Origin: Ophelia neglecta
Lineage: Eukaryota
Assembly (NCBI GenBank): GCA_965285935.1
Contig: OZ260662.1
Coordinates: forward strand, 101,060,001-101,124,000
Reading direction: 5' to 3'
Length of the DNA: 64,000 nucleotides
Below the pieces are notes generated by a model. It was not told where the DNA came from and ran no database searches. It saw only the letters and a program-made list of their open reading frames with translations. Shown piece by piece: positions 2,970 through 61,474 of the stretch. The translations under genes were made by a program, and so were the position numbers. The number at the start of each line of letters is the position of its first letter. The first letter of the stretch is position 1.

Positions 2970-3690
2970 CATGCTCAACATAAAACGTGCATTCGAAACA
3001 TGCAAAGGCAAGATCAACACCACATGCAGCATTCCACACATAGCCTGCAGACTTCTGCTACATGCTCTACAGTAAAGATGGTGCTTTTCAGTAGTGGATT
3101 TATACAATTTGCTGCACCTATAGGTTCTGGGGCAACAAATTGCAGTTTAAATCCTGAAAAGCTTCATCTAAGCCACATGCTTTATCATTACAAGCAAGGA
3201 ACATGTACACACTAGAACTGTGACTCTATATTGAGGCAAGCACATGCAAATAAAATCATGCAAGATGCATAAAATGTTCATGCTCGGGCCAAGCGGTCTC
3301 ACAGCAATAAACACAGAGCGTGCCCAGTCGGTTTCACTCAGTGACAGCACACCATTACAAACATGCTCATAGCATATTCCACGGCCATCAGCAAGGCTAT
3401 CTACATGCAAAACACCAGCCAAAAAGATTGAATCATGCCACTAAATTCAATAATCAAATTTTCAGGCAGAGTTTGCATGCAGCTTTACATTCAAGAGAGA
3501 TAGACATGCGGAACAAATATCAAGCAGTTTTCAGCAACATTCAATAGAGTGTTGACGAGTGTTTTTTTTGGCAGGCACCACTTTCTACTACAGCAAGATG
3601 CATCGGTGAAGCTCTGAGGCAGACGTAAATTGCATTTGCCGACAAAAATTCAAAAATCACAAACACACACAAATTCATCATTTCATGCTT
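2970..3690 (-). promoter_or_regulatory. Cluster of Rbfox-type (U)GCAUG intronic splicing motifs
   Basis: About 14 CATGC on the + strand (GCAUG in the minus-strand pre-mRNA). Six are full CATGCA, at 2999, 3023, 3243, 3257, 3404 and 3476. Only about 2 occur in the opposite orientation. Confidence 0.6.
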
Positions 3691-5991: not shown

Positions 5992-6166
5992 CATTTTCGT
6001 GCAGGCCTCGTTGAGGGTTCTGTGGAGGAAGGTGTCCCCCTGGTTGGTACCGGCCGGACATTGGGGCTGCTCCATGTTCTTGGAGTCACAAACGAAGTTT
6101 TCAGCAGCTGTGGTCCTATCTCTAGATACCTCCAAGGTTATACTATAATAGTCAGGTATCGGGTGT
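5992..6166 (-). CDS. Internal coding exon (175 nt, phase 2-0) of the TNFR-Cys-module protein: (R)HPIPDYYSITLEVSRDRTTAAENFVCDSKNMEQPQCPAGTNQGDTFLHRTLNEACTKM
   Basis: tttttttttcag acceptor, ATG|gtcagt donor, open frame, and phase match to exon 7061-7337 (AG+A = Arg). Confidence 0.85.
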
Positions 6167-6626: not shown

Positions 6627-7083
6627 GACAAAATTTAGGATCACGACCTCTAGTAGTTTCAGACTATTTTTTAGGGTCATTACCTATAGTTGTTTCAGAC
6701 TATTTTTAGGGTCATTACCTATAGCAGTTTCAGACTATTTTTAGGGTCATTACCTTTAGCAGTTTCAGACTATTTCTAAGGTCATTACCTATAGCAGTTT
6801 CAGACTATTTCTAAGGTCATTACATATAGCAGTTTCAGACTATTTCTAAGGTCATTACATATAGTGGTTTCAGACTATTTTGGGTCATTATCTAGAGTAG
6901 TTTAAGACTATTTTAAAGCTTAATTACCTATTACAGTTTAAGACTATTTTAAAGCTTCATTACCTATAGTAGTTTCAGACAATTTTTAGGGTCATTACAT
7001 GTGGTGGTTTCAGACTATTTTTGGTCATTACAGTTTCAGACTATTTTATAGCTTCGTTACCTGCAGTGGTTGCGGACTATTTT
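6627..7083. repeat. ~35-bp minisatellite (TAGGGTCATTACCTATAGCAGTTTCAGACTATTTT) whose last unit overlaps the exon/donor junction at 7060/7061
   Basis: CAGAC recurs at 6660, 6696, 6731 and 6766. The unit at ~6953 matches 7050-7083 at 27/34 positions. Confidence 0.9.
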
Positions 7084-7337
7084 GCTGAACTTGGTTTTAT
7101 CCTCGCTGTTGTTTGGATTCCCCAACATATATTTATTGTCACTTTCATGGTCGCCATCTTCATACTCCGGAATCAGATGGACATTAAGTATGCCGATATT
7201 AACTTCAAGGCCAGACTCGCGAATCCAATAGAAGTCCGAGGCCTGGGTCATATCAGTAACATAATATGTAGTCTCCAGGTTCCTAGTGCTGTGTAAATCC
7301 TCCAGGAATAAATTGTCAGAAGCTTCTACTTTGAGCC
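7061..7337 (-). CDS. Internal coding exon (277 nt, phase 1-2): LKVEASDNLFLEDLHSTRNLETTYYVTDMTQASDFYWIRESGLEVNIGILNVHLIPEYEDGDHESDNKYMLGNPNNSEDKTKFSKIVRNHC
   Basis: Core of ORF 7057..7353; tttccgtttcag acceptor, CAG|gtaacg donor; phases match both neighbours. Confidence 0.85.
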
Positions 7338-8226: not shown

Positions 8227-8618
8227 CATGCATTATTAATTTTGTCAATAACCATGGCATGCTTCCTTCAACATGCAACCTAGAGCCACAAATCTGTTGG
8301 CCAGACATTCCATACAAATAAAATTAAGCTCCCAACAAAATCCAAATACAAATATTGATTTAATGTTTTGAATCAAGGAACTTTTTAGAGCATTGCAAAC
8401 CAAAGCCCTTTGAAATTATATCAACTTCATGTCATGCAAATGTCTAAGACCAAACAATATCTAATAATACTGGGTGCACATAAAATAGATAACATAATTA
8501 GTCAATAAATTTGGTCTCTCGAAGCATGCAGCATTACCAAGACAATAATAAAACACAAATTATTGTGTTTAACAAAGCACACACGAGAATTAAACATTCA
8601 ACATGTCCAATGCATGCA
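8227..8618 (-). promoter_or_regulatory. Cluster of five UGCAUG (Rbfox-type) motifs downstream of the candidate microexon
   Basis: CATGCA on the + strand at 8227, 8272, 8433, 8525 and 8613, plus CATGC at 8258. Confidence 0.6.
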
Positions 8619-8745
8619 TCTAAATGTCTAAACTACAGATAGATCATTCACAATACCAAACAATCTTACGAGAAAAGTACAAACAAACAAGAAAAAATTG
8701 TGTGCCACCAAAGGAGAAAGGTCACAAAATGTCACTTGCTTTTAC

Positions 8746-8781
8746 GCTTTTTGAGTGTTGGCTTCTTCCATTGCAGTTCTG
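8746..8781 (-). CDS. Candidate 36-nt alternative microexon (phase 1-1): AELQWKKPTLKK(R)
   Basis: Pyrimidine-rich acceptor tctttcctcccaatgtttcag (NAGNAG) and donor C|gtaaaa. An alternative in-frame A|gcaagt donor gives 42 nt. In frame between exons 10547-10603 and 7061-7337, with a downstream UGCAUG cluster. Confidence 0.55.
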
Positions 8782-10546
8782 CTGAAACATTGGGAGGAAA
8801 GATAACACCGGGGAGACAAGAGATGTCCAAATCACAGTGATATTGCCAATAACAGCAATTCAGACTGGGTATTATAGAGGGCGCCCTAGGTCGCTGAGTT
8901 CTGCTGGGTCTATTATCACTTACTTATAGGTTCATTCACAGTGTGATCTGTCGGCATATACAAGTCTAAATCGCATAACTGACTGCCACCTAATACATTC
9001 CACTCACCCACTCATTGTTAATTGGATGCCTTAATAACTATTTACTCACTAACTAAAGAGAGCTTAATAAATGCAAATTTCTTCTTTCAAATGATTGATA
9101 GTTATTCAGATGATGTTTGTTAATGTTGGAATTCATGAGCATGCATGAACTGTGCATCTGTTTCTCCGTGCTACTAGTAAACTTATAATGAGCAATTATA
9201 TAGCCATATGCACCCAAATACGTCTGCACTGAGTATAGAGTGCCTGAATAGGGAAGCATAAGGAGCCACAGAAAATCTTTATACAGCTTATTATTTAAAC
9301 CATATATAACATAACTATATTGATTCCAATTTTTTTAATTGCTGAATGACTGCCACAGAATTGAGCAAGCATATAGTTAAGTAAGATGATGCAAATAGAC
9401 ACCCACTGGGAGGTCAACAAAAAGTCAAACTGCAGAATTTAAAAAGCAGATTATAGGATTTTCAATGGAATGCCTCTTAGAAATTTCAGGAGAAAATTTA
9501 GACATACATATTAAGGTAGGATCTAGCATCAAACTGTTAAGATATTGAAGTAATATATTAAAGAAGATGACATAGTCTGCTCTTTGATGGAGGTTAAACT
9601 AACTTAACTCTTAGGTTAGCATGCCTCAAAATGGCACCACAAAAGTATAAAAAATTCTGCCTTGTTTTAAGCCCTCAATATAGGATATTGCCTAAAACGA
9701 GTTTATCCTTTTTCCATCATTTGTATTAGCTTGTGATAGACAAAGGGTAAAAAAATTAAACAAACAGTTAACATGCCATTATTAATCAGATCTTGGGGCA
9801 TGTGATATAGGCTCTTATTATTATAACGTATTCTCTCTTGGGCAAGTATCTGTTGTTTTCTGATTATTGGAATAAACGTTCAAAATATCGCTATCTTATG
9901 CCAACAGGAATAGTTGAATGATAAAATTTATTTTTATCTAACAGAAATAAATAACATTACAGTTGCCATTGGCCAGTGTAAAAAGTAAAATAAATACGTA
10001 ATATTGTGATATTATCAGAGGCAAGTTGATGACACCATATACATGAACTCAACGGAGACAGTTTATAATGTATACCATAGAGGAGCAGTTAAACAGAGGA
10101 AGGGGGTTTAATTACAGTACAACAGTAGTTTATTAGGCTGAGAGTGTAAGAGTGCAGCTCGAAAATCCTATACATATACTTGTGATGCATGGTCATTCAC
10201 AATATTGTCAGTGTTTGTTCCTCAACTAAATTCAAACTGTGCAGAACCATGCATACTTTGCATAATTTATCCAAAAATTCAAAATGCATACATATTCAAA
10301 CAGAAATTTTCATCATACGGAATGCAGACCGGACATGCACCGTGGGTAGTAGTAGTGGGCATATTACCCTACGAGGCCCAAACGGAAATCCTGGGCTTGC
10401 CAATAATAGTATTTTAAGTAGTATGAACTAAATAATTCCGGGGCAGTACACTAGGGGTGCCCATGACTATTAGTTTATTAATATGTTTAATTGGAGCATT
10501 TATGGTGGCAGATTTAAATAGTTCCTGTTGTGTGTTGGTGACTTAC

Positions 10547-10603
10547 CCTCCAGGAATGTAGGGGTGGTTATTTCACGCGTAATCAGCACAGGATGAGCCA
10601 CAT
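10547..10603 (-). CDS. Internal coding exon (57 nt, phase 1-1), linker: (H)VAHPVLITREITTPTFLE
   Basis: ttttgtttcatttcag acceptor, consensus GG|gtaagt donor, open in the expected phase. Confidence 0.8.
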
Positions 10604-12847: not shown

Positions 12848-13939
12848 TATCTATATATTTATAAATTTATAGATATATGGATATAACATATTCAATATAA
12901 CATATTCAATATTGTTTACCTCAGTGTGACATGTTTAATCAAAGTTATATCTGAAATGTGTCAAACAAAACTTCCAGTGGAATGCTGCAGTGTAGTAAGC
13001 TGACTCAGTAAAAATGCAATGCCAGTACTTTTTTCACAATATTCTCCCGTTTTGATGTTTGCCTCAGCTAGCAGAAATTGGTTGTCTGATCCCAAAGCAG
13101 CAAAAGACGATCCTTATTGTTCATGCAACAGGCCCATAACTATAACAGTTTATCACTGGCCTGGGGGTCCTTCACTGCGGTAATCGTGACACACAGTTTT
13201 CTTAAACCTATAAAGCGTGGGTTATTATTTGTCTGGGGAAGCCGTGGTTCGTCCCAAAGCAAAAATAACTACAATGATCTCCTTGTGCGTTTGGTCTTTT
13301 GTTGCTCTGATGAGGCAATAAAGCAACCACATATAATCTAGTTTCAGGGATACCCCGACTAAATGTTACATGTACAATGTTAGTTGGCCATAATGTACAG
13401 CTGAAGCCATCAGAATGTGATCTGTGTATGTATACGTCATACGTGTACAATCTACAGGCCGGAGAGGCAGAAAGGGCACCTCATAAGGCAGTAACCCACA
13501 TGCTGGCTATGACATTCTAGGCTTTTAAAATAGCAAGTTCACTCTGACAGCTCTGAAATGTATTGTTTATTTATATGGATCAAAACATATTTAGAGGCAA
13601 TCATAAACATATTAAACATTTTTAAATGTGGTTATCAGTAAGACCCCAGCAGGAACTAAGCCTGTTCTCATGTACTCTAATGGTATAAATAACTATAAGC
13701 TACAATCGGACTACTAATACCAGACTACAAAATTATTGTAGTCTGGTGGTTTGGACTACAGATGAGAGTTTCTCAGTCCAGACCATGTATATTGTAACGA
13801 TATAACTCTCATCTGTAGTCCAAACACCCCAGGGGGGGGGGGGGGACTGTGTACAGCATAAAATCAGACTTCTAATACCAGACTACAATATACATGGTCT
13901 GGACTGAGAAACTCTCATCTGTAGTCCAAACACCCCAGA

Positions 13940-14245
13940 GGGGGGGGGGACCTTGCCCTGATAATGGGTACATATTTGCCTTGTCAACATTGAGGCCCAG
14001 ATTTAATGGGTCAAAATTCTACAATATAACTAATGATGGGGTCAAAATTCTACATTAAGACTTATTATTGGAGTCAAAAAAGTACATATTTGCATAAGGC
14101 AGGGTCAAATCTCTACATCATGTATTATTCCTGAAAAGTGCCAAAACTCTACTGCATATGGCACAAAGGGGGGGGGGGATGGTTGTCAATACCACTGCAC
14201 ATAGATGTATGTACTTCCCAAGGTATAGGATGTCCCCCCCCCCCC
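13940..14245. mobile_element. G/C-ended dispersed repeat (probable non-autonomous DNA transposon)
   Basis: Inverted homologue at 41587-41880 (CATTGAGGCCCA...GGGTCAAA; GGGG.ACCT.GCCCTG end). Confidence 0.55.
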
Positions 14246-14324
14246 TCCCCTCTACCCCTCCAAACAAGCTCAACCTCAATCCTCACCCACATAAATGTCA
14301 AATTATTTTAATACAAAAACACAA

Positions 14325-14668: not shown

Positions 14669-14740
14669 GCATGCACTCGCGGTCACTGGTCGCCCCACAC
14701 GGCCTGGCTTCATACATAGATCCTTTACATTTGGTGCATT
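14669..14740 (-). CDS. Internal coding exon (72 nt, phase 1-1), TNFR-Cys-like module: (E)CTKCKGSMYEARPCGATSDRECM
   Basis: cttcttgcag acceptor, gtaagt donor, and a C-x2-C-x4-Y-x4-C-x4-DRxC pattern typical of TNFR cysteine-rich modules. Confidence 0.9.
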
Positions 14741-25270: not shown

Positions 25271-25345
25271 CTTGGCAGACTCTGTCCCCGAAGTTCGAGC
25301 AGGGATGGGCCTCAAACGTGCCAGGCGGACACCCGGTGCTGCATG
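25271..25345 (-). CDS. Internal coding exon (75 nt, phase 1-1), TNFR-Cys-like module: CSTGCPPGTFEAHPCSNFGDRVCQ
   Basis: tttgttttag acceptor, AAG|gtaaga donor, and a CPPGTF...PC....DRVC pattern typical of TNFR cysteine-rich domains; part of ORF 25191..25394. Confidence 0.9.
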
Positions 25346-28251: not shown

Positions 28252-28934
28252 TATGTAAATGTTCTGGTTTACAGTAAGGCCAGGCCTCATTTGAGGGGCA
28301 ATATGACGCCCACAGCTGGAGGTCTCGCCCGGCTCCTCTCCAGCCATAATCCTGGTTATAACTGCCAGTGATTCTGAATATGCCCAGAATACATGTTCTT
28401 CAGGAGCAATTATTGAGGAGAGTGTAAACCACATTATAGTCTTACGGCCCAGCCGTAGGAGAATAAGGGAATCTTGGCAGATTCTCATCATGAGCTGCTT
28501 TCTCCGTTTGACATTACCAGCTACTGTCTGATCCAAGCCCTGATCAAAGCACTGCTTATTTGGACAATATTCAATATTCTGCCTCACGGAGGAGAAGAAT
28601 TGTCGGTCTGAGGAACATTTAGCTGACTCAATTGACAGAAGACAACAAGCAGGTCTGCGTAAGGCACAGTGACCCCTTATCAGCCATGTTTAAACATTGC
28701 CATAAAGAACCCTGCATGTTATATCAATATTTGATCCTCCTATTCCTCCTACAGGGCTAGGATGACAACTGCCATCTTACAAAACAGCAGTGTCTCCTTT
28801 TACCAATCAGGCAAATAGGATGTGATTTTAGAAGGCTGCTATCTAACAAGCACTCAAAATAACTCAATTTCCATGGAATGTCTGCATGCTGCTCAACCCA
28901 GGCCTTACTGTAATACCACTGGCCGATTAAACAG

Positions 28935-29612
28935 AAAGGAGGGGGAGGATCTGAGGGGGATGGGGTCCGGTTCTGGTCCCCTTTAGGCCCCAAGGGGTGT
29001 CCAGCAGGTTTATTCCAGTTGGTGGCCTGGGGTAGACCAATCCTGTATCCACCACTGACTTACCCTGGGGGGGGGGGGGGGGGGGTAAGAGGTAGGGGAT
29101 CCTTGAACCCTCCCCCCCCCCATGGATCAAATCCTGGCCACCTTTAGGCCCCAAGGGTGTCCAGCAGGTTTATACCAGTTGGTGGCCTAGGGTAGACCAA
29201 TACTGTATCCACCACTGACTTACCCTGGGGGGGAGGAGGGGGGGGGCAAGAGGTATGGAATCCTGGAACCCCTCTCCCCATGGATCAAGTCCTGGCCCCC
29301 TTTAGGCCCCAAGGGGTGTCCAGTAGCTCTTTGTACCACCTGGCCCCCTAGGGTGGTACAAACCTGTATCCACCACTGACATCCCCTGGGGTGGTGGTGG
29401 CAGGGAGGTGGGGGTGGGGCAAGGTGTCCAGCAGCATAAGACCAGCTGGCCCACAAGGGTGGTACAATCCTGTATCCACCACTGAATTACCCTTAGGGCA
29501 AGGGGTAGGGATGTCTAACACCCCCCCCCCCAGGGGGTACCCACTCTGGTCCTCTTTCTGCCTCTAGACGTGTCCAGCAACTGCCAACCCTGTGCAATCC
29601 TGTATCCACCAC
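28935..29612. repeat. Degenerate ~110-160-bp tandem repeat with poly-G tracts
   Basis: CTGTATCCACCAC motif near 29042, 29203, 29363, 29470 and 29599; intervening sequences are homologous to each other. Confidence 0.8.
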
Positions 29613-29924
29613 AGAATACTGTGTTCGGTGTAAAAGGCTCACATTTTACTCAAGCTTAGACAACTTTCTCCTTCAGAGGACATCCTACACCAACATACTT
29701 CTAAAATATTTAAGGAAAAACCAGGAAATAAATGCCAGGATGACCAAGTGTCGACAGCTGTAGGCACGAAGACCTGACACTGATTAGATCATGATCACTA
29801 CTTTAAAACAGTACATGAAAGACCTGTCAATGATTTGGACTTAGTAAAAAAAAGCAATATATACGTATCTTTAATAGGGGTTAGCCAGATCTATAAGTAT
29901 GTAGCTCCACGCCTTTGGAACAAA

Positions 29925-50090: not shown

Positions 50091-52094
50091 GAAGCATGGC
50101 CTTGAAATTCCTCATCCATCCGGTCAGCAACCACCAGCCAAATCTTCCCAGACACATCAGATGGTACAAATGGACAGACAATTAAATCTTTTATTGGCTA
50201 ATCCATCAGCGACGCTGTCATTAGCCTATAACGATGAAGGTAATGGAGGCATTGTAACAGCAATCGAGGGACCATCCGATTCAGACATCTGCAGCATTTA
50301 TAAACAGCAGGATGTCTGATTTGTTCACTTCAACTCATCTGCTTGCAATAAAAGGACAAATTGCCGCATTTTGGTCTTGACTGGCATAAGTAATATGGTC
50401 AGAGATGTCATACTCAAACACTGGAATAGCCAAATAGCTCAAGACTCAGATCTGTAAATAACAGGCCCAAACTAAGAATCATGAGTGATGAATTTGTACC
50501 ATTAACATTGTAAGATACTCCCAAAATGGCACCTTTCTAGGTATAATTGACACTAAATTGACTTTGGTTCCCTGGTGGCTCTCCACAATGATTATCTGAT
50601 GCTATTGTGATTAACAGCCTTCACAGGGAGGGGAACACTCCATACCAAGTATGGTGGTAAGTGGGGTGAGTGGCCGGCCTGGGACTGGCCAAATGGAGGT
50701 AACGTGCTAGAAATGGCGGGAGGACAGCCTCTGTGCACACTGACACCTCCGTCTGGTTAACTGGGGGTTTGCACACAACTTATTGGTTTAAAGCTGGCAG
50801 GCTGAGTGCCAGAGACAGGCCTGGGGATGAATGGCCCTAGCCATACATGGATAAGCTTCTCCCCAAGCACATTAATCATGGCAGACAAAAGCAGGCATCT
50901 TGTCACCACTCGTACATTATGTCGCCTGACTTAACATATCTGTTAGACTTACAAGCCATTTAGGACAGAGAGTTATGTAGAAGACACCTTCAAATTACAG
51001 TGGAGAATGATTTAGGAAGATATTTAAGAGATAACCTGTAATAGATTGCCCCTGCCTTTGACTGGAGGTGTGAGCCAGTGCAGGGAGGTAAGGAGTCCCA
51101 ACCCCTGCTCCACAGCACCACTGCCAGCCTCTCCAGAGGTAAATGTCTGCATTTGTCCTATTGTTACTCTGAGTGGTGTACTAGTGCCCATGAATTAGGA
51201 CACTGTTTAGTTAATTTTTAGATGGTTTAATTTTGCTGCACTTGCCAACCTCAGGAGTTAATTAGCTGCAGGTGACAAAGACTTTATTACTATTTAAACA
51301 AATTATATACTTGGATATAAACTTGAAAAAGATAGCCTCCTGTCAGCCATGTTTGCCCTTGTTTTGGCCCCATACACATACAGCTGAGGCAGAGACCCAG
51401 GGAGGCACTCGTATTGTCGTGTGTGGACATCAACTTCTAACTTTTCTCCAAACTCTGACCTGGATGTGGGGAAACAAATGCAAAAATACTGACATGTATT
51501 TAAAAATATGACCCTAATCGCAGACCAGCATTTTTGAATGCATACATTTTTTATAGACAGAGGTCGCCACGTATGTAGGTAAGAAGTATCATGACCTGGG
51601 AAATGGTGCTGCAGTCAGAGTAAAGTTTCACACTGCATTAATCCTGATATGGAAAAAAAACATGGCGGAAGCCACAATTAACATGAAAAAGGGACCCTAA
51701 CCCCGGACCTTGAGCATAAAAACCTACCCCTTTTCAGCCACAATTCTTGTAAAAGACATCTAAGTGCTGGTCAGCGCCGGTCAGCATCTGAGGCTAAACA
51801 CAAAACCTTTCCCCCTTTTTTTGGCATGGACATGACTCCAGATTCTCCGGAAGTGGCCCTGCCCCTGGGGGTAGATCAGAGTGTGTGTGACAGGCAGGGC
51901 AGTAGGTGGTATGGACTGCAGCCACTGAGCACACTCATACCTACACCTGACAGCTTCAAGTGAGAAGATCTCAGAGTGACCCCGGCCTCCTCAGGGAACT
52001 GTCATCTCCAGACTCAAGTCACTTCTACTACAAGGCAATATACCTAGTACACAAAAGGGCAGGGGAGCAATCAGGCAGTGGGGCCATGAGGGGA

Positions 52095-53365
52095 GACGAA
52101 GAGCACTGCAGGAGAGACCAACAGGGGAAGGGGGGCCAGGAGGAGGCCAAGAGAGCTGCAAGAGAGACCAACAGGGGAAGGGGGGCCACCAGGAGGCCAA
52201 GAGAGACCTACAGGAGAGACCAACAGGGGAAGGGGGGCAAGGAGGAGGCCAAGAGAGCCGCAGGAGAAACCAACAGGGGAAGGGGGGCCAGGAGGAGGCC
52301 AAGAGAGCTGCAAGAGAGACCAACAGGGGAAGGGGGGCCACCAGGAGGCCAAGAGAGACCTACAGGAGAGACCAACAGGGGAAGGGGGGCAAGGAGGAGG
52401 CCAAGAGAGCCGCAGGAGAAACCAACAGGGGAAGGGGGGCCAGGAGGAGGGCAAGAGAGCCGCAGGAGAGACCAACAGGGGAATGGGGGCCAGGAGGAGG
52501 CCAAGAGAGCTGCAGGAGAAACCAACAGGGGAAGGGGGGCAAGGAGGAGGCCAAGAGAGCTGCAGGAGAAACCAACAGGGGAAGGGGGGCAAGGAGGAGG
52601 CCAAGAGCACTGCAGGAGAGACCAACAGGGGAAGGGGGGGCCACCAGGAGGCCAAGAGAGACCTACAGGAGAGACCAACAGGGGAAGGGGGGCAAGGAGG
52701 AGGCCAAGAGAGCCGCAGGAGAAACCAACAGGGGAAGGGGGGCCAGGAGGAGGGCAAGAGAGCTGCAGGAGAGACCAACAGGGGAACGGGGGCCAGGAGG
52801 AGGCCAAGAGAGCTGCAGGAGAGACCAACAGGGGAAGGGGGGCAGGAGGAGGCCAAGAGCACTGCAGGAGAAACCAACAGGTGAGGGGGGGGGGGCAGGA
52901 GACCTGCAGGAGACACCAACAGGGGAACGGGGGGCCAGGAGGAGGCAGAGAGAGAGCTACAGGTGAGGGGGGGGGGGGGGGGCAGGAGGAGACTGAGAGC
53001 ACTGCAGGAGAGACCAACAGGGGAAGGGGGGCCAGGAGGAGGCCAAGAGCACTGCAGGAGAAACCAACAGGTGAGGGGGGGGGGCAGGAGGAGGGTAAGA
53101 GAGCTGCAGGAGAGACCAACAGGTGAGGGGGGGGGGGCAGGAGGAGGGTAAGAGAGCTGCAGGAGAGACCAACAGGGGAACGGGGGCCAGGAGGCCAAGA
53201 GAGCCGCAGGAGAAACCAACAGGGGAAGGGGGGCCAGGAGGAAGTGGAGAGACCTGCAGGAGAGACCAACAGGGGAAGGGGGGCCAGGAGGAAGTGGAGA
53301 GACCTGCAGGAGAGACCAACAGGGGAACGGGGGCCAGGAGGAAGTGGAGAGACCTGCAGGAGAGA
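52095..53365. repeat. ~50-bp purine-rich minisatellite
   Basis: Unit GAGAGCTGCAGGAGAGACCAACAGGGGAAGGGGGGCCAGGAGGAGGCCAA; explains ORFs 51960..53126, 52071..53369 and 52208..53386. Confidence 0.95.
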
Positions 53366-54209
53366 ACATTGGTAGTGGGGCCTCAAGGAGGTTCAGTTAA
53401 CTGCAGTAGAGGGCCATGAGAGGGCAAGTCAATGACCAAGAGAGGGTAAGCCGAGAGGCTGCTGAGGGCAACAAGCCCTGGCCTAACAGCCAGAGTGACA
53501 ATCACCATGCCCTTCAATGGCCTTCTACAGCCTTCTGACATTTCACAGGGCTAGGCGAAAACGCTTGAAGCAAATCCAGCCAAGGCCAACAAGCTACAAT
53601 CTTCATGAATAACAAAATAAAGACTTATCTCTTGGGCAAGGATAGGATATGAAGGGGATACATATACAGCTTGAATGTTACTATAGGATCACAATGAAAT
53701 ATTGCTTTTACAAGAATGTCTGTACAGATTTTTGTGTTGTTAAATTATGACAATATTTACCAAGCAGTCCCTTGGCATTCTGATTATTTATCATGGCAAA
53801 ATGGTCCTACAGATGTACCAGATTAATGTATAATCAGAGTTTACTGGCAAGTTGAATGCTAAAAATCCCATTGTGATCCCATCTACACCACAATAAATAA
53901 TACTTAGTGTGGCTCAGGAACTCCTGACAATGAACTCATGTATAATTGATCCCCAGCCTACAGAATTGTCTCTCAGTAGCAACTGTGATTTCCTACTAAC
54001 TTAACACACCAGAAAATTAAGCTCATCAACATGCAGAAAAACCATACCAGATTAATATATAAATATACCTACATAATAAACCTACAAAAAGTGTCAGATA
54101 ACATAGAGCTAAAGGAGTAGACTCCTTGGGCTAAATGGTCATGTATTGTAGGCCTCACATAGAAGTTACGACCCCTAATATGTGCCACATACTATTCAAC
54201 TATTTATAA

Positions 54210-54363
54210 CAATCAGGTCAGTCAAGGGACAGGGAAAACTGACCACATTATGTAAGTGGCCCTTGAGGCAGGTCAGTTAACACATGCGTGAAGGGGGATT
54301 GGGTTATTATTCAGAGGACAGGTGACCTTATTACACAGGTGACCACAAACACAGGTTTTACTG
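54210..54363. mobile_element. Truncated MITE (family of 11995-12160)
   Basis: Ends CACAGGTGACCACAAACACAGGTTTTACTG|TA. Confidence 0.7.
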
Positions 54364-54394
54364 TATTTTCACTTATATTACATTTTATTGCCTA

Positions 54395-54775
54395 TCATTG
54401 CTAGAGACTTGTCCTATGAGTAATGCTAGACTTGTTTTCTAGGAGTAATGCTAGAGACTGGCTCCCTATGAGAAATACTAGAGACTGGTTCCCTATGAGA
54501 AATGCTAGAGACTTGTCCTATGAGAAATGCTAGAGACTGGTTCCCTATGAGAAATGCTAAAGACTGGTTCTATGAGTAATGCTAGAGACTGGTTCCCATG
54601 AAAAATGCTAGAGGCTTGTTCCCCATGAGTCATTCTAGAGACATTTACCCATGAAAAATGCTAGAGGCTTGTTCCCCATGAGTAATGCTAGAGGCTTGTT
54701 CCCCATGAGTTATGCTAGAGGCTTGTTCCCCATGAGTTATGCTAGAGGCTTGTTCCCCATGAGTAATGCTAGATA
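54395..54775. repeat. ~27-bp minisatellite (ATGAGTAATGCTAGAGGCTTGTTCCCC)
   Basis: Period of 27 at 54678/54705. Confidence 0.92.
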
Positions 54776-55050
54776 AGGGCAAAGTCACATAAAAATAAAA
54801 CAATTCATAATGTTTGCAAAATTATTATTGCGAATGTTGCAAACATTGTGTGCTCAAAGAAATTTCCTAACTTACTGTTAATTCCTGGCAATAAATAGAA
54901 CTCGATCATTGCACATGACAGAAAACTCCATCCAGAACTGATAGTAATTAATACAGCAGAGAATGAAATGAACAACGAAGCTGAGCTATAAGTTTGTCTT
55001 ACAATCACGTCATCTCCAAGTTTGACTCAGATCACAAATCACAATCTACT

Positions 55051-55287
55051 GGGCTGGGTTTCTGGAAGCTGTATTAAGTCTTAACTTGGATTAGAATCAG
55101 GATTAAAGTGCTTAATCGGTTCTAACTTGCTAATCAGGGTTTCTGGAAGCTGGATTTGGTAGTAAACCTAGAAAGTTTGGTCTTAAACTCAATTCTGGTC
55201 AATGGAAACACTGAATAACAGTCTTAGCTAATTGGTTCTAAGCTAATCTTATCCCTAAGCATAAGACTGCTTCCAGTAACCTGGCCC
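55051..55287. mobile_element. Harbinger-like MITE copy (family of 16874-17110)
   Basis: GGGCTGGGTTTCTGGAAGC ... GCTTCCAGTAACCTGGCCC. Confidence 0.8.
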
Positions 55288-55700
55288 AGGTTTGACTCCG
55301 AGCACAAATCAGAATCGGTAAATTAACACTCATGAGTTACCGGAACGACACAAGAAGCTTAGGCTGCAAATGTCAACAAACTCGTATAACAGATTCAAAT
55401 GCCTACATACTTATGTCAACAAACTCATATAGCCCATTCAATAGTCAACAGTCATACTACCTAGTTCACTATAATACTGTATGACTGGATAAAGTTTGCG
55501 AAAATGGATATTTTGACCAGATTGTAAAAATTTCCCGCAAGCTATTTAGATATGTAGCCCTACATTCTCTGGTTCAATACTACTTACAAAATATAAGGTT
55601 ACCTATGATTCGTGCAAACTTCCTGTTTAAAGAATAACCTGTGACGTTTATAAACACTAGGTCCTTGGAAGGTCCTTCAATGATCCTCCAAGGAAATATA

Positions 55701-55878
55701 CAGTGAAACCTGCCTTAAAGACCACCTCTATAATCAGGACACCTGTCAATTCAGACCATTAATATGAGGACCATGCTGTATACTTTCAATGGTAAACAAC
55801 CTGTCTAAACAGACCACCTCCAAAATCAGACCTGTATTTTCCAGTCCCTTTGGTGGTCTTAATTCACAGGTTTCACTG
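55701..55878. mobile_element. 178-bp CAGTGAAACCTG MITE
   Basis: Perfect 12-bp TIRs and TA TSD. Confidence 0.9.
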
Positions 55879-55974
55879 TAGTCAGACAGGACTAGAGAAG
55901 GGTGAAGTTTTAAAAGGTAGTCCAACTCCAATAAACAGACATTATAGTGCAGCAGTTCAAGCCAAGGGGCTCTG

Positions 55975-56439
55975 AAGTCGGCTCTACTTTTAATGTATAT
56001 AAAGTGCCAAGGGCCGCTATAATTGGCTCTATATTTTACCTAGTACTCTCTATTAAAGAGCCCCCCTAACACCATATCAGCCTCTATTGCACTGGAGTTT
56101 GTCTTGTAGCTTTTGGGGCAGTTTTGGGACTGTTTATACAGTGAAACCTGTCTTAAAGACCACCTCTTTATTCAGACCACCTGTCCATTCATACCATTAG
56201 TATGAAGACCATAGTATACATTTTCAGGATAAAATAACCTTTATAAACAGACCACCTCTATAATCAGAGCAGTATTTGCCAGTCCCTTGGGAGGTCTTAT
56301 TTCACAGGATCCACTGTACATGTATTTGTCTTTAATTTCTCCATTGTCAGTCAGAGAGGAACTTTTAGAAAATATGCTTATTCTAATGGCACTTAAGAGA
56401 CAGCAGTTCTGCATATCTGTTTGGCACCCACAGTGTTAA
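55975..56439. mobile_element. piggyBac-like dispersed repeat carrying a nested MITE
   Basis: Homologous to 29925-30211 on both sides of the 56139-56316 insert. Confidence 0.55.
56139..56316. mobile_element. 178-bp CAGTGAAACCTG MITE (nested)
   Basis: TA|CAGTGAAACCTG ... CAGGATCCACTG|TA; same length and family as 55701-55878. Confidence 0.88.
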
Positions 56440-56787
56440 AAACATGCTCCTAATCGTCTAGAGTACAAGTCTCTGTACAAAGTGAGGTGAACAATGGAGC
56501 CCAATGAAGCTTTTATAGTTCTCATCAACAACATGCCACCCAATATGCTGTAAACCCAATTTATTACTCAGCCAAGAAATGTTAGGCATGAAACTTAGTT
56601 TAAACATATACTTGATAGATTTGTACAAGACGGAGCAATAAAAGCATGGCCCTTTATATGGCTTTCCCATTGCCAAGTTCCTGCCAAAGGGGCAGAAATC
56701 TCCTCATCTATTACACTGAAGGGATACACAGAAAGATGTGACACGCCTAAGTTCATTATTGTCTAAATGTCACATGCTGTATGACAA

Positions 56788-57155
56788 TGTCTATTGACAG
56801 GTTTGACTGTGCTGTCCTCTAGTGGACAGGTTTGACTGTGCTGTCCTCTAGTGGACAGGTCTGACTGTGCTGTCCTCTAGTGGACAGGTCTGACTGTACT
56901 CTTGTGGACAGTTCTGACTGCGCTGTCCTCTAGTGGACAGGTCTGACTGTACTCTAGTGGACAAGTCTGACTGTGCTGTCCTCTAGTGGACAGGTCTGAC
57001 TGTACTCTAGTGGACAGTTCTGACTGCGCTGTCCTCTAGTGGACAGGTCTGACTGTACTCTAGTGGACAAGTCTGACTGTGCTGTACTCTAGTGGACAGT
57101 TCTGACTGTGCTGTCCTCCAGTGGAAGGGTCTGACTGTGTCTGACTGTAATTGAC
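56788..57155. repeat. 29/24-bp minisatellite (CTCTAGTGGACAGGTCTGACTGTGCTGTC)
   Basis: Direct inspection. Confidence 0.92.
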
Positions 57156-57619
57156 AGTTCTGTCGTTGCTCTCTTCAGGAATATGCAGTATATTGTTGGC
57201 ACATCAGTTCCATTCAAACAGGTATGTTGGACAGAGCTCATCCCATTAGTTATCTACACATATATATGTACAGTGCTCACTTCATGAAGGAAAACAATAA
57301 AAGCATCATGTAAAATTAAAGATGAATATTTCATTTGCAAATAAAACTGGAAGTTATCACAAAAGCCAAAGCACATTATACCTTCATTCAATTTCTGAAA
57401 TAACATACTCCAAATGACATTTCATTTGGTTGAGTCAAGGTATGGTAGCAGCGTATAAAATGCCTGGAAAAGGGGGAGGCATAGCCTAATATTAAATAAG
57501 TGGGAGGGGTGGCAGGCTTAAGGAATTTTACGGATGGCAGCTTAATAGCTCCATGACCCAATGGCCAATACCAAGTTAATATCTATAGGTTTGGAGAACA
57601 GTGCTCAGCCCACCCATAC

Positions 57620-58795
57620 ACCCCCTCCCCCTCCTATATTGCCTGTGATACCCCCACCCTTTCTCCTTACTGGGATCCCCCACCTACCCCCTGTCCTACC
57701 TGGGATCCCCCACCCACCCACTCTCCTACCTGGGATCCCCCACCCACCCCCTCTCCTACCTGGGATCCCCCACCCACCCACTCTCCTACCTGGGACCTCC
57801 CACCCACCCCCTCTCCTACCTGGGATCCCCCACCCACCCCCTCTCCTACCTGGGATCCCCCACCCACCCACTCTCCTACCTGGGACCTCCCACCCACCCC
57901 CTCTCCTACCTAGGATCCCCCACCCACCCCCTCTCCTACCTTGGATCCCCCACCCACCCTCTCTCCTTCCTGGGACCTCCCACCCACCCCCTGTCCTACC
58001 TGGGATCCCCCACCCACCCCCTCTCCTTCCTGGGAGCCCCCACCTACCCCCTCTCCTTCCTGGGATCCCCCACCCACCCCCTCTCCTACCTGGGATCCCC
58101 CACCCACCCACTCTCCTACCTGGGACCTCCCACCCACCCCCTCTCCTACCTGGGATCCCCCACCCACCCACTCTCCTACCTGGGACCTCCCACCCACCCC
58201 CTCTCCTACCTAGGATCCCCCACCCACCCCCTGTCCTACCTGGGATCCCCCACCCACCCTCTCTCCTTCCTGGGACCTCCCACCCACCCCCTGTCCTACC
58301 TGGGATCCCCCACCCACCCCCTCTCCTTCCTGGGACCTCCCACCCACCCTCTCTCCTTCCTGGGATCCCCCACCCACCCACCCCCTCTCCTTCCTGGGAC
58401 CCCCCACCCACCCCCTCTCCTACCTGGTACCCCCCCACCTACCCCCTGTCCTACCTGGGATCCCCCACCCACCCACTCTCCTACCTGGGATCCCCCACCC
58501 ACCCCCCCTCCTACCTGGGATCCCCCACCCACCCACCCCCTCTCCTTCCTGGGATCCCCCACCCACCCCCTCTCCTACCTGGTACCCCCCACCTACCCCC
58601 TGTCCTACCTGGGTTCCCACGCCCACCCTCTCTCCTTCCTGGGATCCCCCACCCACACCCTCTCCTACCTGGTACCCCCCACCTACCCCCCCTCCTACCT
58701 GGGATCCCCCACCTACACCATGTCCTACCTGGGATCCCCCACCTACCCCCCCCCTCCTACCTGGGATCCCCCTCCCACCGACTCCACCACCTGGG
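57620..58795. repeat. 30-bp C-rich minisatellite (CACCCACCCCCTCTCCTACCTGGGATCCCC)
   Basis: Columns stay in register across the 60-bp lines; explains Pro-rich ORF 57561..58964. Confidence 0.96.
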
Positions 58796-61474
58796 AAGTT
58801 TTAAATCACAAGTGCTATGGACCATGTGTCATATTCATCCACCTGTAGCTTTTAGAATGTTTTTAAATCATATCAATCCTAGTCGACTTGGTCACGGAAC
58901 ATTTGTTATTGCCTTTAGCAAAGAAAAAAATCAATTAAACAAAGCAATTATTATAGATACTTAAACAGGACATATACAAAAATCCTTCTTATAAAAAATA
59001 CCATACAACTGCATATTTAAAATCAGGAAAAATTGAAGTGCGTTCTTTGATTACAGGGCAACCCCCTGTCTATGTATTAATCTGCAAAGTATTTCTGGGT
59101 ATGCCTTTAACATGCAGCACACCTGTTTGAGGACAAATGGTATAAAGAGAATGCTGATTATGAGCAGGCCTACCTCTGTTAGCATTGTAGGAGGTCCCAC
59201 TCTGGAAATAGTGCATCCAGAACAGCAGCGATACAAGTATCCTCAGAGCTGAAGCCATTTTGTCTACCGATTAGTGCACCTTATACATTGACAGTGTGCC
59301 AGGCCATGGGTTACACGCCATACATAGCCCTGTGACACTCACAAAGACAGTATCCTCCTTGGAGTTGAGTGCAGACACCTTGACTACTTGACTACAATCC
59401 GGTTTGACATCGGAGTGCCGGCGAGGCTTGTTGCTGTCCTAGCACTGCTTGGCTCTGGTGGTCTGCCTTACCAGCCCCGGCCTCGCGCTGTGTCCTGTGT
59501 ACTATACACTGGTTCTCCGACCCTCAGCCTCTCCCAGTCCTTGCTGGCCAGCGGTCCACTACATACAAAACACGGTATATAGCCCACAATCCCCTAGTTG
59601 TTTTATCTATGACCAGCAGGTTGCGGGCACTTCACACCTCCTTATTTCACACCTCCTTACTTCTCCCCTGTTATCTTAACAGCCATCCCAGCCAGACAAA
59701 CACTATTGAGCGTCCTTTGACAAAGAATGCTTCTTCACTGCACATCATCTGACTTACAATTCCTATCATCCATCTTCAGCAGATTTGCCCGTTCTCTTGC
59801 GCAGGGCTCCGGTTTCAGCGGGCTGCAAAATCCAATTGAACGAGATGTGTTTTTCTCATCTGAAGGGAATCGCAGTGCATGTGAAGGGAGTCAGGCTCTC
59901 ACACACAATACCCAGTTGGCAGCTTTTTGCTGCCCAGCCTCCATCCCAAGGGCTATCATGAGCATGTCAGGCATGTGCATTTATACCTCCAAATAAAATT
60001 CCAAGTGTTGATGCCTATTTGATATTCAGATGTCTAAAGAATGGTCTACGGCTAAAACAGGCCTATTTATACTCAGAAATATGTTTGGCAGCCAGAACCA
60101 GCGACTGAGGCAATTGAATCAGTATAAAGACAGACAGATCGTTCAAAATGCTGGCAGCAGCTCTGTATATAGATGAACTGCAGTTTCCCCAGCATGTATG
60201 GTGTAAGTTGTATTGCAATAAGCTAGCACCATGCGCCAGACGCTGCACCCGAGCACTTAAACCATAATAAACAGCCCATTTATGAAAGAGTTGCCTGTCC
60301 ACCAGGTACATCTAAGTCCAATTGACATTCGGCTACCAATCCTGCCAGGTTGAATGGGATCACTATCCTAATTTGGCTGAGCCTTGATCTGATGCTCCGT
60401 CCTGGTTGTCCTAATGTGGTGGTTCTGGCAGGAAACCTGTGGCCGTCTGTCCCTCTCTCACGGTGTGAGTACCGTGGCACTCTGGCAGTGTCAGACAAGT
60501 CAAGTGATCTGGGTACTCCCAGCCCAGCCTGATGCTGGTATCAACCTCTAGAGATGTCACCTGACTCGAGTGGCATGGCTATGAAGGCCTATCGTCAGAT
60601 TGGCCGCACACTTACAGCCAGCACTGCTTACAGCCAGCACTGCCGAGGTGTTTAAGACACTGTCTTATCTCTGCTGACCGCTGCTTGCCAGAGACCCGCT
60701 GGAGAATCACACGCTCCCAGCAATAAAGCAGCTAGCCATGCATGCATAACCCGCACAGAGCCGTGGGCTACGACCGAGAGTGGCACTGAAAGTGGGGCTG
60801 AGAATGGGACAACGGCAGATAGAGGCCGCTCAGGCGTCGTGTTGAGGCCACCTTGTGCTGATCATGCTCCTGCCACAAATGTGTGCCACTGCTCCCCCCG
60901 GCTCTACTCAAGGAGGCCTATTAAAACATGGTCATCAGTCTCCAGAAGCATGGAGGCTTGCTACCAGCGGATTCCAATCAATACTGATAAACACTGCTAA
61001 AAATGAAAAGCTATCCTGCATAGAGTAACACCATCCTCTTAGAAATCCTATAATCCTAAACTCCCATTCTCACTTTCTGCTGCTATAGCTTTATTGTTAT
61101 TGGGGCTGGTTTGTCCATTTTATGCCTGTTTGGACCAATTCAAAGATCCTGTAGCCTAAATCCACGAGAAAGGCTGGGGTATGGAAGGCCATGGAGGCAG
61201 GATATTATCATGCAATAGGTTTATTAATCACTGTTATTTGACAGCCTACCAGTACTACTTAATGGACATAGTGCTTGAACAAGCGGCACAGATATTTTGT
61301 TTAATCCAAACATTAATCTATTATGCCGCCATCTACAATATCATGCGATCAGGCAATAATGGACAGAATGAAATGTGAGGAGGCAGCATTTGTTTGCCTA
61401 TCAAGGCATTGTACAGGTCATGTAGGATAGACAGGTACATGGACTTGTGGGATTAGGGCAGGGTTAAGTCATGT

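What the first reader, a model, noticed from the sequence alone, without database searches (positions are those of the whole stretch)
8227..8830. Rbfox-flanked microexon that would switch on a basic (convertase-like) site between the TNFR modules and the downstream region
Seen: a phase 1-1 exon of 36 nt (8746-8781), or 42 nt with the GC donor, followed 130-520 nt downstream by five UGCAUG. Skipping gives ...PTFLE-G-LKVEAS. Inclusion gives ...PTFLE-AELQWKKPTLKKR-LKVEAS or ...LKKRKR-LKVEAS. In both cases the final Arg codon is created only by the splice junction (C+GG or A+GG). Known: KR dibasic and polybasic motifs are proprotein-convertase sites and heparan-sulfate-binding patches, and downstream Rbfox sites drive neural/muscle inclusion. 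Inference: tissue-specific splicing toggles proteolytic release or matrix binding of the TNFR-like modules. With the cluster at 2970-3690, this suggests a multi-microexon programme on an uncharacterised gene and is the best candidate for a new system in this window.
Basis: partly seen in the sequence, partly recalled or inferred. Interest (0 to 1): 0.8.

Follow-up and report, generated by a model that had tools for sequence, protein, structure and literature searches.

The report
Conserved polybasic microexon in orphan receptor
A tiny 42-base coding exon that adds a lysine/arginine-rich tail to the outside linker of an uncharacterised multi-pass membrane protein of worms and molluscs is real and conserved, but whether it is a protease-cleavage switch, or is controlled by Rbfox, is not shown.

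Summary
On the minus strand lies a frame-preserving (phase 1-1) mini-exon, 8781-8746 (36 nt, GT donor) or 8781-8740 (42 nt, GC donor), with five UGCAUG 122-508 nt downstream.

Comparative data show it is a real coding exon. It recurs between the same two flanking exons in a paralog 1 Mb away and in related metagenome contigs (at least five other lineages). Its length is always a multiple of three (36, 39 or 42 nt), it is always open in phase 1, and it always ends in a basic tail.

Only the distal donor is conserved, so the 42-nt form is the ancestral one. Annotated isoforms of a nemertean orthologue (Lineus) splice an 18-nt microexon in and out in the same linker, just before the next domain.

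The gene is an uncharacterised, roughly 1800-residue lophotrochozoan protein with EGF/TNFR-like modules and several membrane spans.

A furin-type motif is not conserved: P1 is Lys in three lineages and canonical R-X-K/R-R occurs in one. The UGCAUG cluster is seen only in the window and one related clade. In orthologues the TNFR-like modules are membrane-anchored on their N-terminal side, so cleavage would not release them.

No RNA data were available. I file it as a new member of a known kind.

The parts
8740..8781 (-). Conserved microexon, 42-nt form (phase 1-1). It encodes A-E-L-Q-W-K-K-P-T-L-K-K-R-K plus the first base of the junction Arg codon. The donor is AAA|GCAAGT, with GC at 8739-8738.
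   Evidence: Homologous exons of 42, 39, 39 and 36 nt were found in the paralog, L001/L011/L017/L022, L005 and L008, and a 42-nt one in L023. The distal donor is present in all of them.
8746..8781 (-). It would be a tandem alternative donor giving a tail two residues shorter (…L-K-K-R).
   Evidence: The inner GT is present in the window, the L001 clade, L023 and the paralog but absent in L008 and L005. It matches U1 at 5 of 9 positions against 7 of 9 for the distal donor (my count).
8779..8805 (-). Acceptor region: pyrimidine tract and a tandem CAG|CAG (NAGNAG) acceptor, which could add or drop one residue.
   Evidence: The same tttcag|cag arrangement occurs in the paralog and ccag|cag in L008.
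8227..8618 (-). Five UGCAUG (first bases 8618, 8530, 8438, 8277, 8232) and one more GCAUG (8262) in the downstream intron. These are candidate Rbfox enhancer sites.
10547..10603 (-). Upstream constitutive-looking linker exon (57 nt, phase 1-1), encoding V-A-H-P-V-L-I-T-R-E-I-T-T-P-T-F-L-E, with a strong GTAAGT donor.
   Evidence: 57-nt homologues occur in L008 and the paralog. It aligns with the linker after the last TNFR-like module in full-length orthologues.
7061..7337 (-). Downstream exon (277 nt). It starts with GG and then L-K-V-E-A-S, and is the first exon of the large conserved ectodomain.
5992..6166 (-). Next ectodomain exon (175 nt), conserved in orthologues.
14669..14740 (-). TNFR-like half-module exon (72 nt, phase 1-1). 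The equivalent 24-residue piece is a cassette in Owenia.
25271..25345 (-). TNFR-like half-module exon (75 nt, phase 1-1). The equivalent 25-residue piece is a cassette in Lineus isoforms X7 and X9.

Best explanation
The feature is a real, evolutionarily conserved cassette-type microexon. The ancestral form is 42 nt with a weak GC donor. A GT donor 6 nt upstream and a NAGNAG acceptor allow small variants.

It belongs to an uncharacterised lophotrochozoan gene for a roughly 1800-residue multi-pass membrane protein. The extracellular part of that protein carries an EGF_CA module, TNFR-like cysteine-rich modules, a short flexible linker and a large ectodomain of about 600 residues.

Inclusion inserts 13-15 residues into that linker. 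The insert has an aromatic/Lys-Pro core and ends in a run of four to six Lys/Arg. The last basic residue is made by the splice junction itself, because the exon's final A joins GG, AG or AA of the next exon.

Skipping gives a linker of the length seen in annotated mollusc, annelid and nemertean orthologues.

I infer that inclusion is regulated, for three reasons: the donors are weak, the flanking intron is ultra-conserved, and a nemertean orthologue is alternatively spliced in the same linker. In this species the downstream UGCAUG cluster makes Rbfox a likely activator.

I also infer that the insert acts as a charge switch on the ectodomain, changing binding to an acidic partner or to glycosaminoglycans, or changing the hinge between modules. 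Convertase cleavage is a possible extra in lineages that have K/R-R.

Shown: the anatomy, the conservation, the frame preservation and the protein-level conservation of the basic tail. Inferred: alternative use, Rbfox control and the biochemical role.
For: - Anatomy and junction codons.
- The only colinear intronic island conserved between the window and contig L001 (exon identity 73% nt) is the 3' end and donor region of the microexon.
- Homologous exons lie between the same flanking exons in L001 and L011 (39 nt), L017 and L022 (39 nt), L008 (36 nt), L005/L006 (39 nt, with GT at the distal donor place) and the paralog on the same chromosome (42 nt). L023 (42 nt) ends before the downstream exon.
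- All lengths are multiples of three and open in phase 1. Only 12% of random AG..GY intervals of 30-48 nt in the flanking introns are. The six chance hits of the same DNA pattern had lengths of 38-48 nt, and four of the six were not multiples of three.
- A strict scan of up to 10 kb upstream of the next exon returned only this exon in L001, L005 and the window.
- The basic tail uses different codons (CGT, CGA, CGC, CGG, AAA, AAG, AGA) and shows K/R swaps between the window and L023. This points to selection on the protein rather than only on an RNA motif.
- Between L001 and L011 (89% identity over 6.3 kb) the longest perfect run, 169 nt, is centred on the microexon and is longer than any run in the neighbouring coding exon. 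By established knowledge this is typical of regulated exons.
- Lineus longissimus isoforms X1 and X2 differ by a 6-residue insert in the same linker, just before the next domain; X4/X9 and X8 splice the linker in other ways.
- GC-AG introns are more prone to alternative splicing, especially of 5' sites (PMC7242645).
- UGCAUG enrichment: five against 1.1 expected. In 1-26 kb there are 25 on the transcribed strand against 6 on the other.
- Topology comes from hydrophobicity scans of seven full-length orthologues. The rest of the gene is present downstream in the genome.
Against: - There is no RNA evidence for this species: the only runs found are genomic DNA. Inclusion, skipping and tissue pattern are therefore all unobserved.
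- No annotated full-length orthologue (Haliotis, other molluscs, Owenia, Tubulanus) has a polybasic insert. The Lineus insert is not basic.
- UGCAUG enrichment is not conserved. There are none within 1 kb in L023, and counts are at chance level in L008, L005 and the paralog.
- The exon was not found in L004 (10 kb upstream) or L014 (2.9 kb upstream). The upstream linker exon was not found there either, so these are uninformative rather than negative.
- The function of the protein and of the insert is unknown. The AlphaFold model was poor (pLDDT 58.8) and the fold search was meaningless.
Confidence: 0.6

Rival explanations
1. One reading: inclusion creates a proprotein-convertase (furin-like) site, so that tissue-specific splicing switches on proteolysis between the TNFR-like modules and the rest of the protein.
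For: The window and the L001 clade end in K-R-K-R before Leu. L005 has a canonical R-K-K-R and the paralog has K-R-R. The site lies in an extracellular linker that is probably flexible: it sits between disulfide-rich modules and an ectodomain, and pLDDT is below 40 over the linker of the model. There is a direct precedent: ApoER2 exon 6B/7B is a 13-residue cassette that brings in a furin site between receptor modules (PMC7410921).
Against: Canonical R-X-K/R-R is absent from the window (P4 is Lys, P1' is Leu). If cleavage is taken at the splice junction, P1 is Lys in the paralog, L005 and L008. L008 has no Arg at all. What is conserved is charge, not a cleavage motif. In all seven scanned orthologues a membrane span precedes the EGF/TNFR modules, so cleavage would give two membrane-bound halves and not a released TNFR-like fragment. 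No cleavage predictor or experiment was available.
Confidence: 0.2
2. The exon is real but constitutive in this clade. On this view it is a lineage-specific lengthening of the linker, not a regulated switch, and the UGCAUG cluster is incidental or serves another exon.
For: There is no RNA evidence of skipping. The exon is kept in every close relative where the region could be read. UGCAUG is not conserved across them. Two UGCAUG also lie 208 and 294 nt downstream of the 57-nt exon, so the motifs are spread along the gene.
Against: Both donors are weak, and a conserved GC donor is unusual for a constitutive exon (PMC7242645). The 169-nt perfect block around the exon is typical of regulated exons. 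The skip form reproduces the linker length of all annotated orthologues. The Lineus orthologue demonstrably splices this linker in four ways.
Confidence: 0.15
3. It is not an exon: a conserved intronic regulatory element or a chance pseudo-exon.
For: No transcript has been seen. The most conserved nucleotides are a 17-nt A-rich block that could be a protein-binding RNA element.
Against: AG acceptors with pyrimidine tracts, a donor at a fixed place, length changes only in steps of three, an open phase-1 frame and K/R codon swaps in at least six lineages. There is no Rfam match.
Confidence: 0.04

Closest known systems
ApoER2 (LRP8) exon 6B (human) / 7B (mouse): a 13-residue furin-site cassette
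   Same: A tiny frame-preserving cassette that inserts a basic motif into the extracellular linker between cysteine-rich ligand-binding modules and the next domain. It is alternatively spliced in brain (PMC7410921).
   Different: ApoER2 carries a true RXXR site, and furin-dependent release of a soluble fragment was shown in cells. Here the motif is polybasic but not a conserved furin consensus, the N-terminal modules are predicted to stay membrane-anchored, and nothing has been tested.
Agrin A/y-site insert K-S-R-K
   Same: A very short alternatively spliced basic insert in an extracellular protein that creates a heparin-binding site and changes partner affinity (PMC6450144).
   Different: It is 4 residues long and lies inside an LG domain loop, in a secreted proteoglycan. 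Here the insert is 13-15 residues and lies in an inter-domain linker of a multi-pass membrane protein. Heparin binding is only inferred.
Rbfox-activated cassette exons with downstream (U)GCAUG
   Same: There is a cluster of five UGCAUG within about 500 nt downstream of a small exon with weak splice sites. Rbfox binds (U)GCAUG in introns near regulated exons (PMC10551640). That downstream sites favour inclusion is established knowledge.
   Different: Motif enrichment is not conserved in most related loci. Neither Rbfox binding nor Rbfox dependence was tested. A search for the Fox-1_C domain in the genome was uninformative.
Lineus longissimus LOC135494436 isoforms X1-X10 (orthologous gene)
   Same: It is the same protein family. 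An 18-nt insert is spliced in or out of the same linker, just before the next domain; phase 1-1 is inferred from the Asn/Asp junction codon. Other small cassettes occur in the ectodomain.
   Different: The Lineus insert is aromatic with one Lys and has no polybasic tail. Its genomic DNA could not be fetched, so exon homology is inferred from position only.
Tandem GC/GT donor choice, as in ING4
   Same: A weak GC donor next to a GT donor gives isoforms that differ by a few basic residues (PMC7242645).
   Different: ING4 is intracellular and the residues belong to a nuclear localisation signal. Use of both donors here is hypothetical.

Membership tests
Rbfox-activated cassette exon | (U)GCAUG motifs enriched in the intron within a few hundred nt downstream of the exon | tested here: met
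   Five TGCATG at +122 to +508, against 1.1 expected; P = 0.005 for the intron and 0.0004 for the 519-nt stretch.
Rbfox-activated cassette exon | Motifs conserved in orthologous introns | tested here: inconclusive
   The L001 clade has 2-3 TGCATG plus further GCATG (P 0.03-0.16), and all six are kept between L001 and L011. There are none in 1 kb of L023, and counts are at chance level in L008, L005 and the paralog.
Rbfox-activated cassette exon | Exon is alternatively included and depends on Rbfox | not testable with these tools
   No RNA runs hold this locus. The Fox-1_C search of the genome was blank, but its controls were blank too.
Proprotein-convertase (furin-type) cleavage site | R-X-K/R-R consensus with Arg at P1 and P4 | tested here: not met
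   The window tail is K-K-R-K-R before Leu: P4 is Lys. Only the looser basic-Xn-basic rule is met.
Proprotein-convertase (furin-type) cleavage site | Cleavage motif conserved in relatives | tested here: not met
   At the junction, P1 is Arg in the window and the L001 clade but Lys in the paralog, L005 and L008. L008 has no Arg. The canonical motif occurs only in L005.
Proprotein-convertase (furin-type) cleavage site | Site exposed in the secretory-pathway lumen or outside the cell | tested here: inconclusive
   It lies between disulfide-rich EGF/TNFR-like modules and an ectodomain bounded by membrane spans in orthologues. Linker pLDDT is below 40 in a weak model.
Proprotein-convertase (furin-type) cleavage site | Demonstrated cleavage | not testable with these tools
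   Needs expression of both isoforms.
Neural microexon programme (SRRM3/4 eMIC type) | Very short, frame-preserving exon with conserved flanks | tested here: met
   36-42 nt, always a multiple of three. A 169-nt perfect block surrounds it between L001 and L011.
Neural microexon programme (SRRM3/4 eMIC type) | UGC motif close upstream of the 3' splice site | tested here: not met
   There is no TGC in the 40 nt before the acceptor in the window or L001. One is present in L008 and one in L005.
TNF receptor superfamily | TNFR_c6 cysteine-rich modules | tested here: met
   The window exons score 26.9 and 25.2 bits, just under the 29.4 cut-off, because each holds half a module. Three of the four full-length orthologues scanned score 29.9-33.7, over the cut-off.
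TNF receptor superfamily | Single-pass type I receptor with a short stalk and a signalling tail (death domain or TRAF sites) | tested here: not met
   Orthologues are about 1600-1900 residues long with six or seven hydrophobic spans, and Pfam finds no domain other than EGF and TNFR_c6. It has TNFR-like modules but is not a classical family member.
Heparin/glycosaminoglycan-binding basic cluster (Cardin-Weintraub type) | Run of basic residues of the XBBBXXBX or XBBXBX kind on an exposed segment | tested here: inconclusive
   The tails are K-K-R-K-R, K-R-K-R, K-R-R-K-K, R-K-K-R-K-K, R-K-R-K and H-K-K. They resemble such clusters. Binding was not tested.

The most novel reading that the evidence does not exclude
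Splicing of this microexon gates a convertase cut that splits an orphan, lophotrochozoan-specific multi-pass receptor into two membrane-anchored halves that stay associated: an N-terminal EGF/TNFR-module half and a C-terminal ectodomain plus multi-span half. That would be a splice-controlled counterpart of Notch S1 or adhesion-GPCR processing. It would form part of a combinatorial code of small phase 1-1 cassettes in the ectodomain that is shared by nemerteans and annelids.
Probability: 0.12. Interest if true: 0.6.

Novelty: new member of a known kind. Interest (0 to 1): 0.4.

Why it matters
It adds an unannotated coding exon, probably with tandem donor variants, to a large protein family found only in lophotrochozoans, for which Pfam recognises only the EGF and TNFR-like modules.

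The linker between the cysteine-rich modules and the ectodomain proves to be a conserved site of isoform diversification, found in the window's clade and in a nemertean orthologue.

If the basic tail changes partner or matrix binding, or processing, it gives a simple handle (plus or minus 14 residues) for studying an orphan receptor.

As a mechanism it is not new. Basic mini-inserts (agrin), furin-site cassettes (ApoER2) and downstream Rbfox motifs are all textbook cases.

Tried and rejected
- **RNA evidence.** Contigs run straight through the introns and show no joints.
- **Earlier findings.** Nothing near this place. Two unrelated first-stage notes on Rbfox microexons elsewhere in the genome were listed.
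- **Orthologue gene loci.** Those of Owenia and Haliotis are too long to fetch, at 104 kb and 282 kb. One further contig had no DNA.
- **Word-index protein search.** With the Tubulanus protein it found only Lineus.
- **ESM Atlas.** No usable hit for either half of the protein.
- **AlphaFold.** A 451-residue orthologue fragment with an 11-row alignment gave pLDDT 58.8. The Foldseek PDB matches had TM-scores of about 0.1 (pore-forming toxins) and are meaningless. The fold of the ectodomain stays open.
- **Fox-1_C domain search of the genome.** Blank, and the controls were blank too.
- **Rfam.** Only a sub-threshold bacterial sRNA match, which is chance.
- **Plus-strand ORFs over the region.** Short and unconserved.
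- **L003, L004, L013 and L014.** These gave no microexon, but they also lack the upstream linker exon within reach.
- **Second UGCAUG cluster (3481-3004).** No phase-0 microexon or conserved island found.
- **Joined model.** The spliced protein was not searched.
Full report
**What is there**

All features lie on the minus strand.

- One search shows a pyrimidine tract ending in a tandem cag|cag acceptor, then an exon starting at 8781.
- Two donors are possible. GC|GTAAAA gives an exon ending at 8746 (36 nt). AAA|GCAAGT gives an exon ending at 8740 (42 nt).
- The upstream exon 10603-10547 is 57 nt, has a perfect GTAAGT donor and ends with a single G.
- The downstream exon 7337-7061 begins with GG followed by L-K-V-E-A-S.
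- Five TGCATG lie 122-508 nt downstream of the distal donor. TGCATG is the commonest hexamer of that stretch.
- A first-order Markov simulation gives P = 0.0004 for the 519-nt stretch and 0.005 for the whole intron.
- In the first 26 kb of the window, which holds this gene, the motif occurs 25 times on the transcribed strand and 6 times on the other.
- The stretch is single-copy in the 762-Mb genome, has no Rfam match of note and has no conserved plus-strand ORF.

**What gene it is**

- The exons at 25345-25271 and 14740-14669 each hold half a TNFR_c6 module.
- The 92-residue exon 7335-7060 was searched by reference against 1.84 billion proteins and found 121 relatives.
- The full-length relatives are uncharacterised proteins of about 1600-1900 residues from a nemertean (Tubulanus), abalones (Haliotis), other molluscs and an annelid (Owenia).
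- Pfam recognises only EGF_CA/EGF_3 and TNFR_c6 in them.
- A hydrophobicity scan shows a common plan:
  - one or two spans come before the EGF/TNFR modules;
  - an ectodomain of about 600 residues follows;
  - then come five more spans and a conserved C-terminal motif.
- The window gene is an orthologue. tblastn places its exons colinearly, and the remaining exons lie downstream of the window on the same chromosome.
- The linker exon 10603-10547 aligns with the 20-25-residue linker that follows the last cysteine-rich module in every orthologue. The skip form reproduces that linker length.
- It has TNFR-like modules but is not a classical TNF receptor.
- The fold of the ectodomain could not be resolved.

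**Is the microexon real?**

No RNA was available: the only runs that hold the locus are genomic. I therefore used comparison.

*The first relative, L001*

- L001 is a 241-kb metagenome contig whose neighbouring exon is 86% identical in protein and 73% in DNA.
- It shares nothing with the window's introns except one colinear 27-nt island, which is exactly the 3' end and donors of the microexon.
- Reading it shows tttcag, a 39-nt exon open in phase 1, and the same AAA|GCAAGT donor.

*Further relatives*

| Locus | Exon length | Notes |
|---|---|---|
| L008 | 36 nt | Lies between a 57-nt linker exon and the next exon. The inner GT is absent; only the GC donor is there. |
| L005/L006 | 39 nt | A canonical GT stands at the place of the GC donor. 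|
| Paralog 1 Mb away on the same chromosome | 42 nt | nhmmer E = 4e-6, again between its 57-nt exon and the next exon. |
| L011 | 39 nt | Close relative of L001. |
| L017, L022 | 39 nt | Found by a pattern scan of metagenome contigs. |
| L023 | 42 nt | Found by the same scan. Peptide closest to the window's. The contig ends before the next exon. |

*Tests against chance*

- The six chance hits of that pattern scan had lengths of 38-48 nt. Four of the six were not multiples of three, and some had stops.
- All true homologues are 36, 39 or 42 nt and open. Only 12% of random AG..GY intervals of that size in the flanking introns are both.
- A strict scan of up to 10 kb upstream of the next exon returned this exon and nothing else in L001, L005 and the window.

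I take the exon as real (about 0.9). Because the distal donor is the only one present everywhere, the 42-nt form is ancestral.

**What is conserved in the peptide**

The inserts, each followed by L-K-V of the next exon (for L023 the junction residue is unknown, because the contig ends before the next exon):

| Lineage | Insert |
|---|---|
| Window | A-E-L-Q-W-K-K-P-T-L-K-K-R-K-R |
| L023 | A-E-L-H-Q-K-R-P-E-L-R-K-R-K-? |
| L001 clade | A-L-A-K-D-S-H-L-H-I-K-R-K-R |
| Paralog | A-E-F-Y-G-P-L-Q-V-N-K-R-R-K-K |
| L005 | x-F-N-R-Q-K-P-E-R-K-K-R-K-K |
| L008 | A-D-F-Y-H-E-K-P-K-T-H-K-K |

- The constant features are an aromatic or Lys-Pro core and a basic tail.
- The basic residues use different codons and swap K for R between lineages. 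Selection therefore acts on charge in the protein, not only on an A-rich RNA element.
- The final residue is always made at the junction: the exon's last A joins GG, AG or AA.

**Is it alternative, and is Rbfox involved?**

This is inferred, not shown.

Evidence for regulated use:

- Both donors are weak. They match U1 at 5 of 9 and 7 of 9 positions, against 8 of 9 for the upstream exon.
- GC-AG introns are more prone to alternative splicing, especially of 5' sites (PMC7242645).
- Between L001 and L011 (89% identical over 6.3 kb) the longest perfect run, 169 nt, is centred on the microexon and exceeds any run in the coding exon next door.
- The nemertean Lineus longissimus has ten annotated isoforms of the orthologue. 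They differ in several ways:
  - X1 and X2 differ by a 6-residue insert in the same linker, just before the next domain. The junction codon switches Asn/Asp, which implies an 18-nt phase 1-1 exon.
  - X4 and X9 use a different linker exon.
  - X8 skips the linker.
  - Further cassettes of 8, 17 and 25 residues lie nearby.
- Owenia skips a 24-residue TNFR half-module.
- In the window the four exons of 75, 72, 57 and 42 nt are all phase 1-1, so any of them can be skipped in frame.

For Rbfox the evidence is weaker:

- The cluster is significant in the window.
- It is modest in the L001 clade: 2-3 TGCATG plus further GCATG, all six kept between L001 and L011.
- It is absent in 1 kb of L023 and at chance level in L008, L005 and the paralog.
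- Rbfox control is therefore plausible for this species (about 0.4-0.5) but is not a conserved property of the exon.
- The UGC motif typical of SRRM3/4-dependent microexons is not present upstream in the window.

**Convertase site or charge patch?**

- The window tail K-K-R-K-R before Leu fits only the loose dibasic rule.
- The canonical R-X-K/R-R appears in one lineage (L005).
- P1 at the junction is Lys in three lineages, and L008 has no Arg.
- The conserved property is a polybasic patch.
- Orthologues have a membrane span on the N-terminal side of the EGF/TNFR modules. A cut in the linker would therefore give two membrane-bound halves and would not release the modules.
- I could not verify that N-terminal span in this genome. 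The exons upstream of 25 kb were not mapped, apart from one hit 57 kb beyond the window. This step rests on homology.
- My preferred reading is a splice-controlled charge switch on an extracellular hinge, as with the agrin K-S-R-K insert (PMC6450144).
- Convertase processing, as with the ApoER2 exon 6B/7B cassette (PMC7410921), is a minority possibility.

**Limits**

- Each exon was searched by reference.
The relatives and the annotated homologues place it among lophotrochozoans.

**Verdict**

It is a new member of a known kind, of moderate interest.

Noticed in passing
window 3004-3481 (minus strand), also 1939 and 2047: A second cluster of six UGCAUG lies in the roughly 8-kb intron after exon 6166-5992. 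The Lineus orthologue has an 8-residue microexon exactly after the equivalent exon. I found no phase-0 mini-exon and no island conserved with related contigs here. The sites at 1939 and 2047 sit in a tandemly repeated ORF-like stretch.
   Followed up: partly
G000:C2:102057095-102071040 (minus), about 1 Mb from the window: A paralog of the whole gene with the same 57-nt linker exon and a 42-nt microexon ending in K-R-R-K-K. Some matches hold stops that may be introns or decay.
   Followed up: partly
window 25345-25271, 14740-14669, 10603-10547, 8781-8740: Four consecutive phase 1-1 exons (75, 72, 57, 42 nt). The equivalents of the two TNFR half-module exons are cassettes in Lineus and Owenia, so these may be alternative here too. 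Two UGCAUG lie 208 and 294 nt downstream of the 57-nt exon.
   Followed up: partly
window 8779-8784: A tandem CAG|CAG (NAGNAG) acceptor that could add or drop the first residue (Ala) of the insert. The same arrangement occurs in the paralog and in L008.
   Followed up: no
window 28700-29800 (minus-strand frames): Repeated proline-rich ORF pieces with a recurring S-V-V-D-T-G-L motif in all three frames. Similar pieces lie at 13700-14300. They look like a dispersed or tandem repeat inside the gene's introns.
   Followed up: no
window 52000-64000: G+C rises to 0.52-0.66 with very strong GC and AT skew (for example 52-54 kb: GC skew +0.33, AT skew +0.51; 62-64 kb: GC skew -0.47). This suggests satellite or low-complexity DNA.
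   Followed up: no
L005 5539-6060 and L001 18779-20366: Related contigs carry transposon-like ORFs in the introns of this gene: a reverse transcriptase in L001 and a 173-residue ORF just upstream of the next exon in L005. This explains why the microexon lies 5.5 kb from that exon in L005.
   Followed up: no
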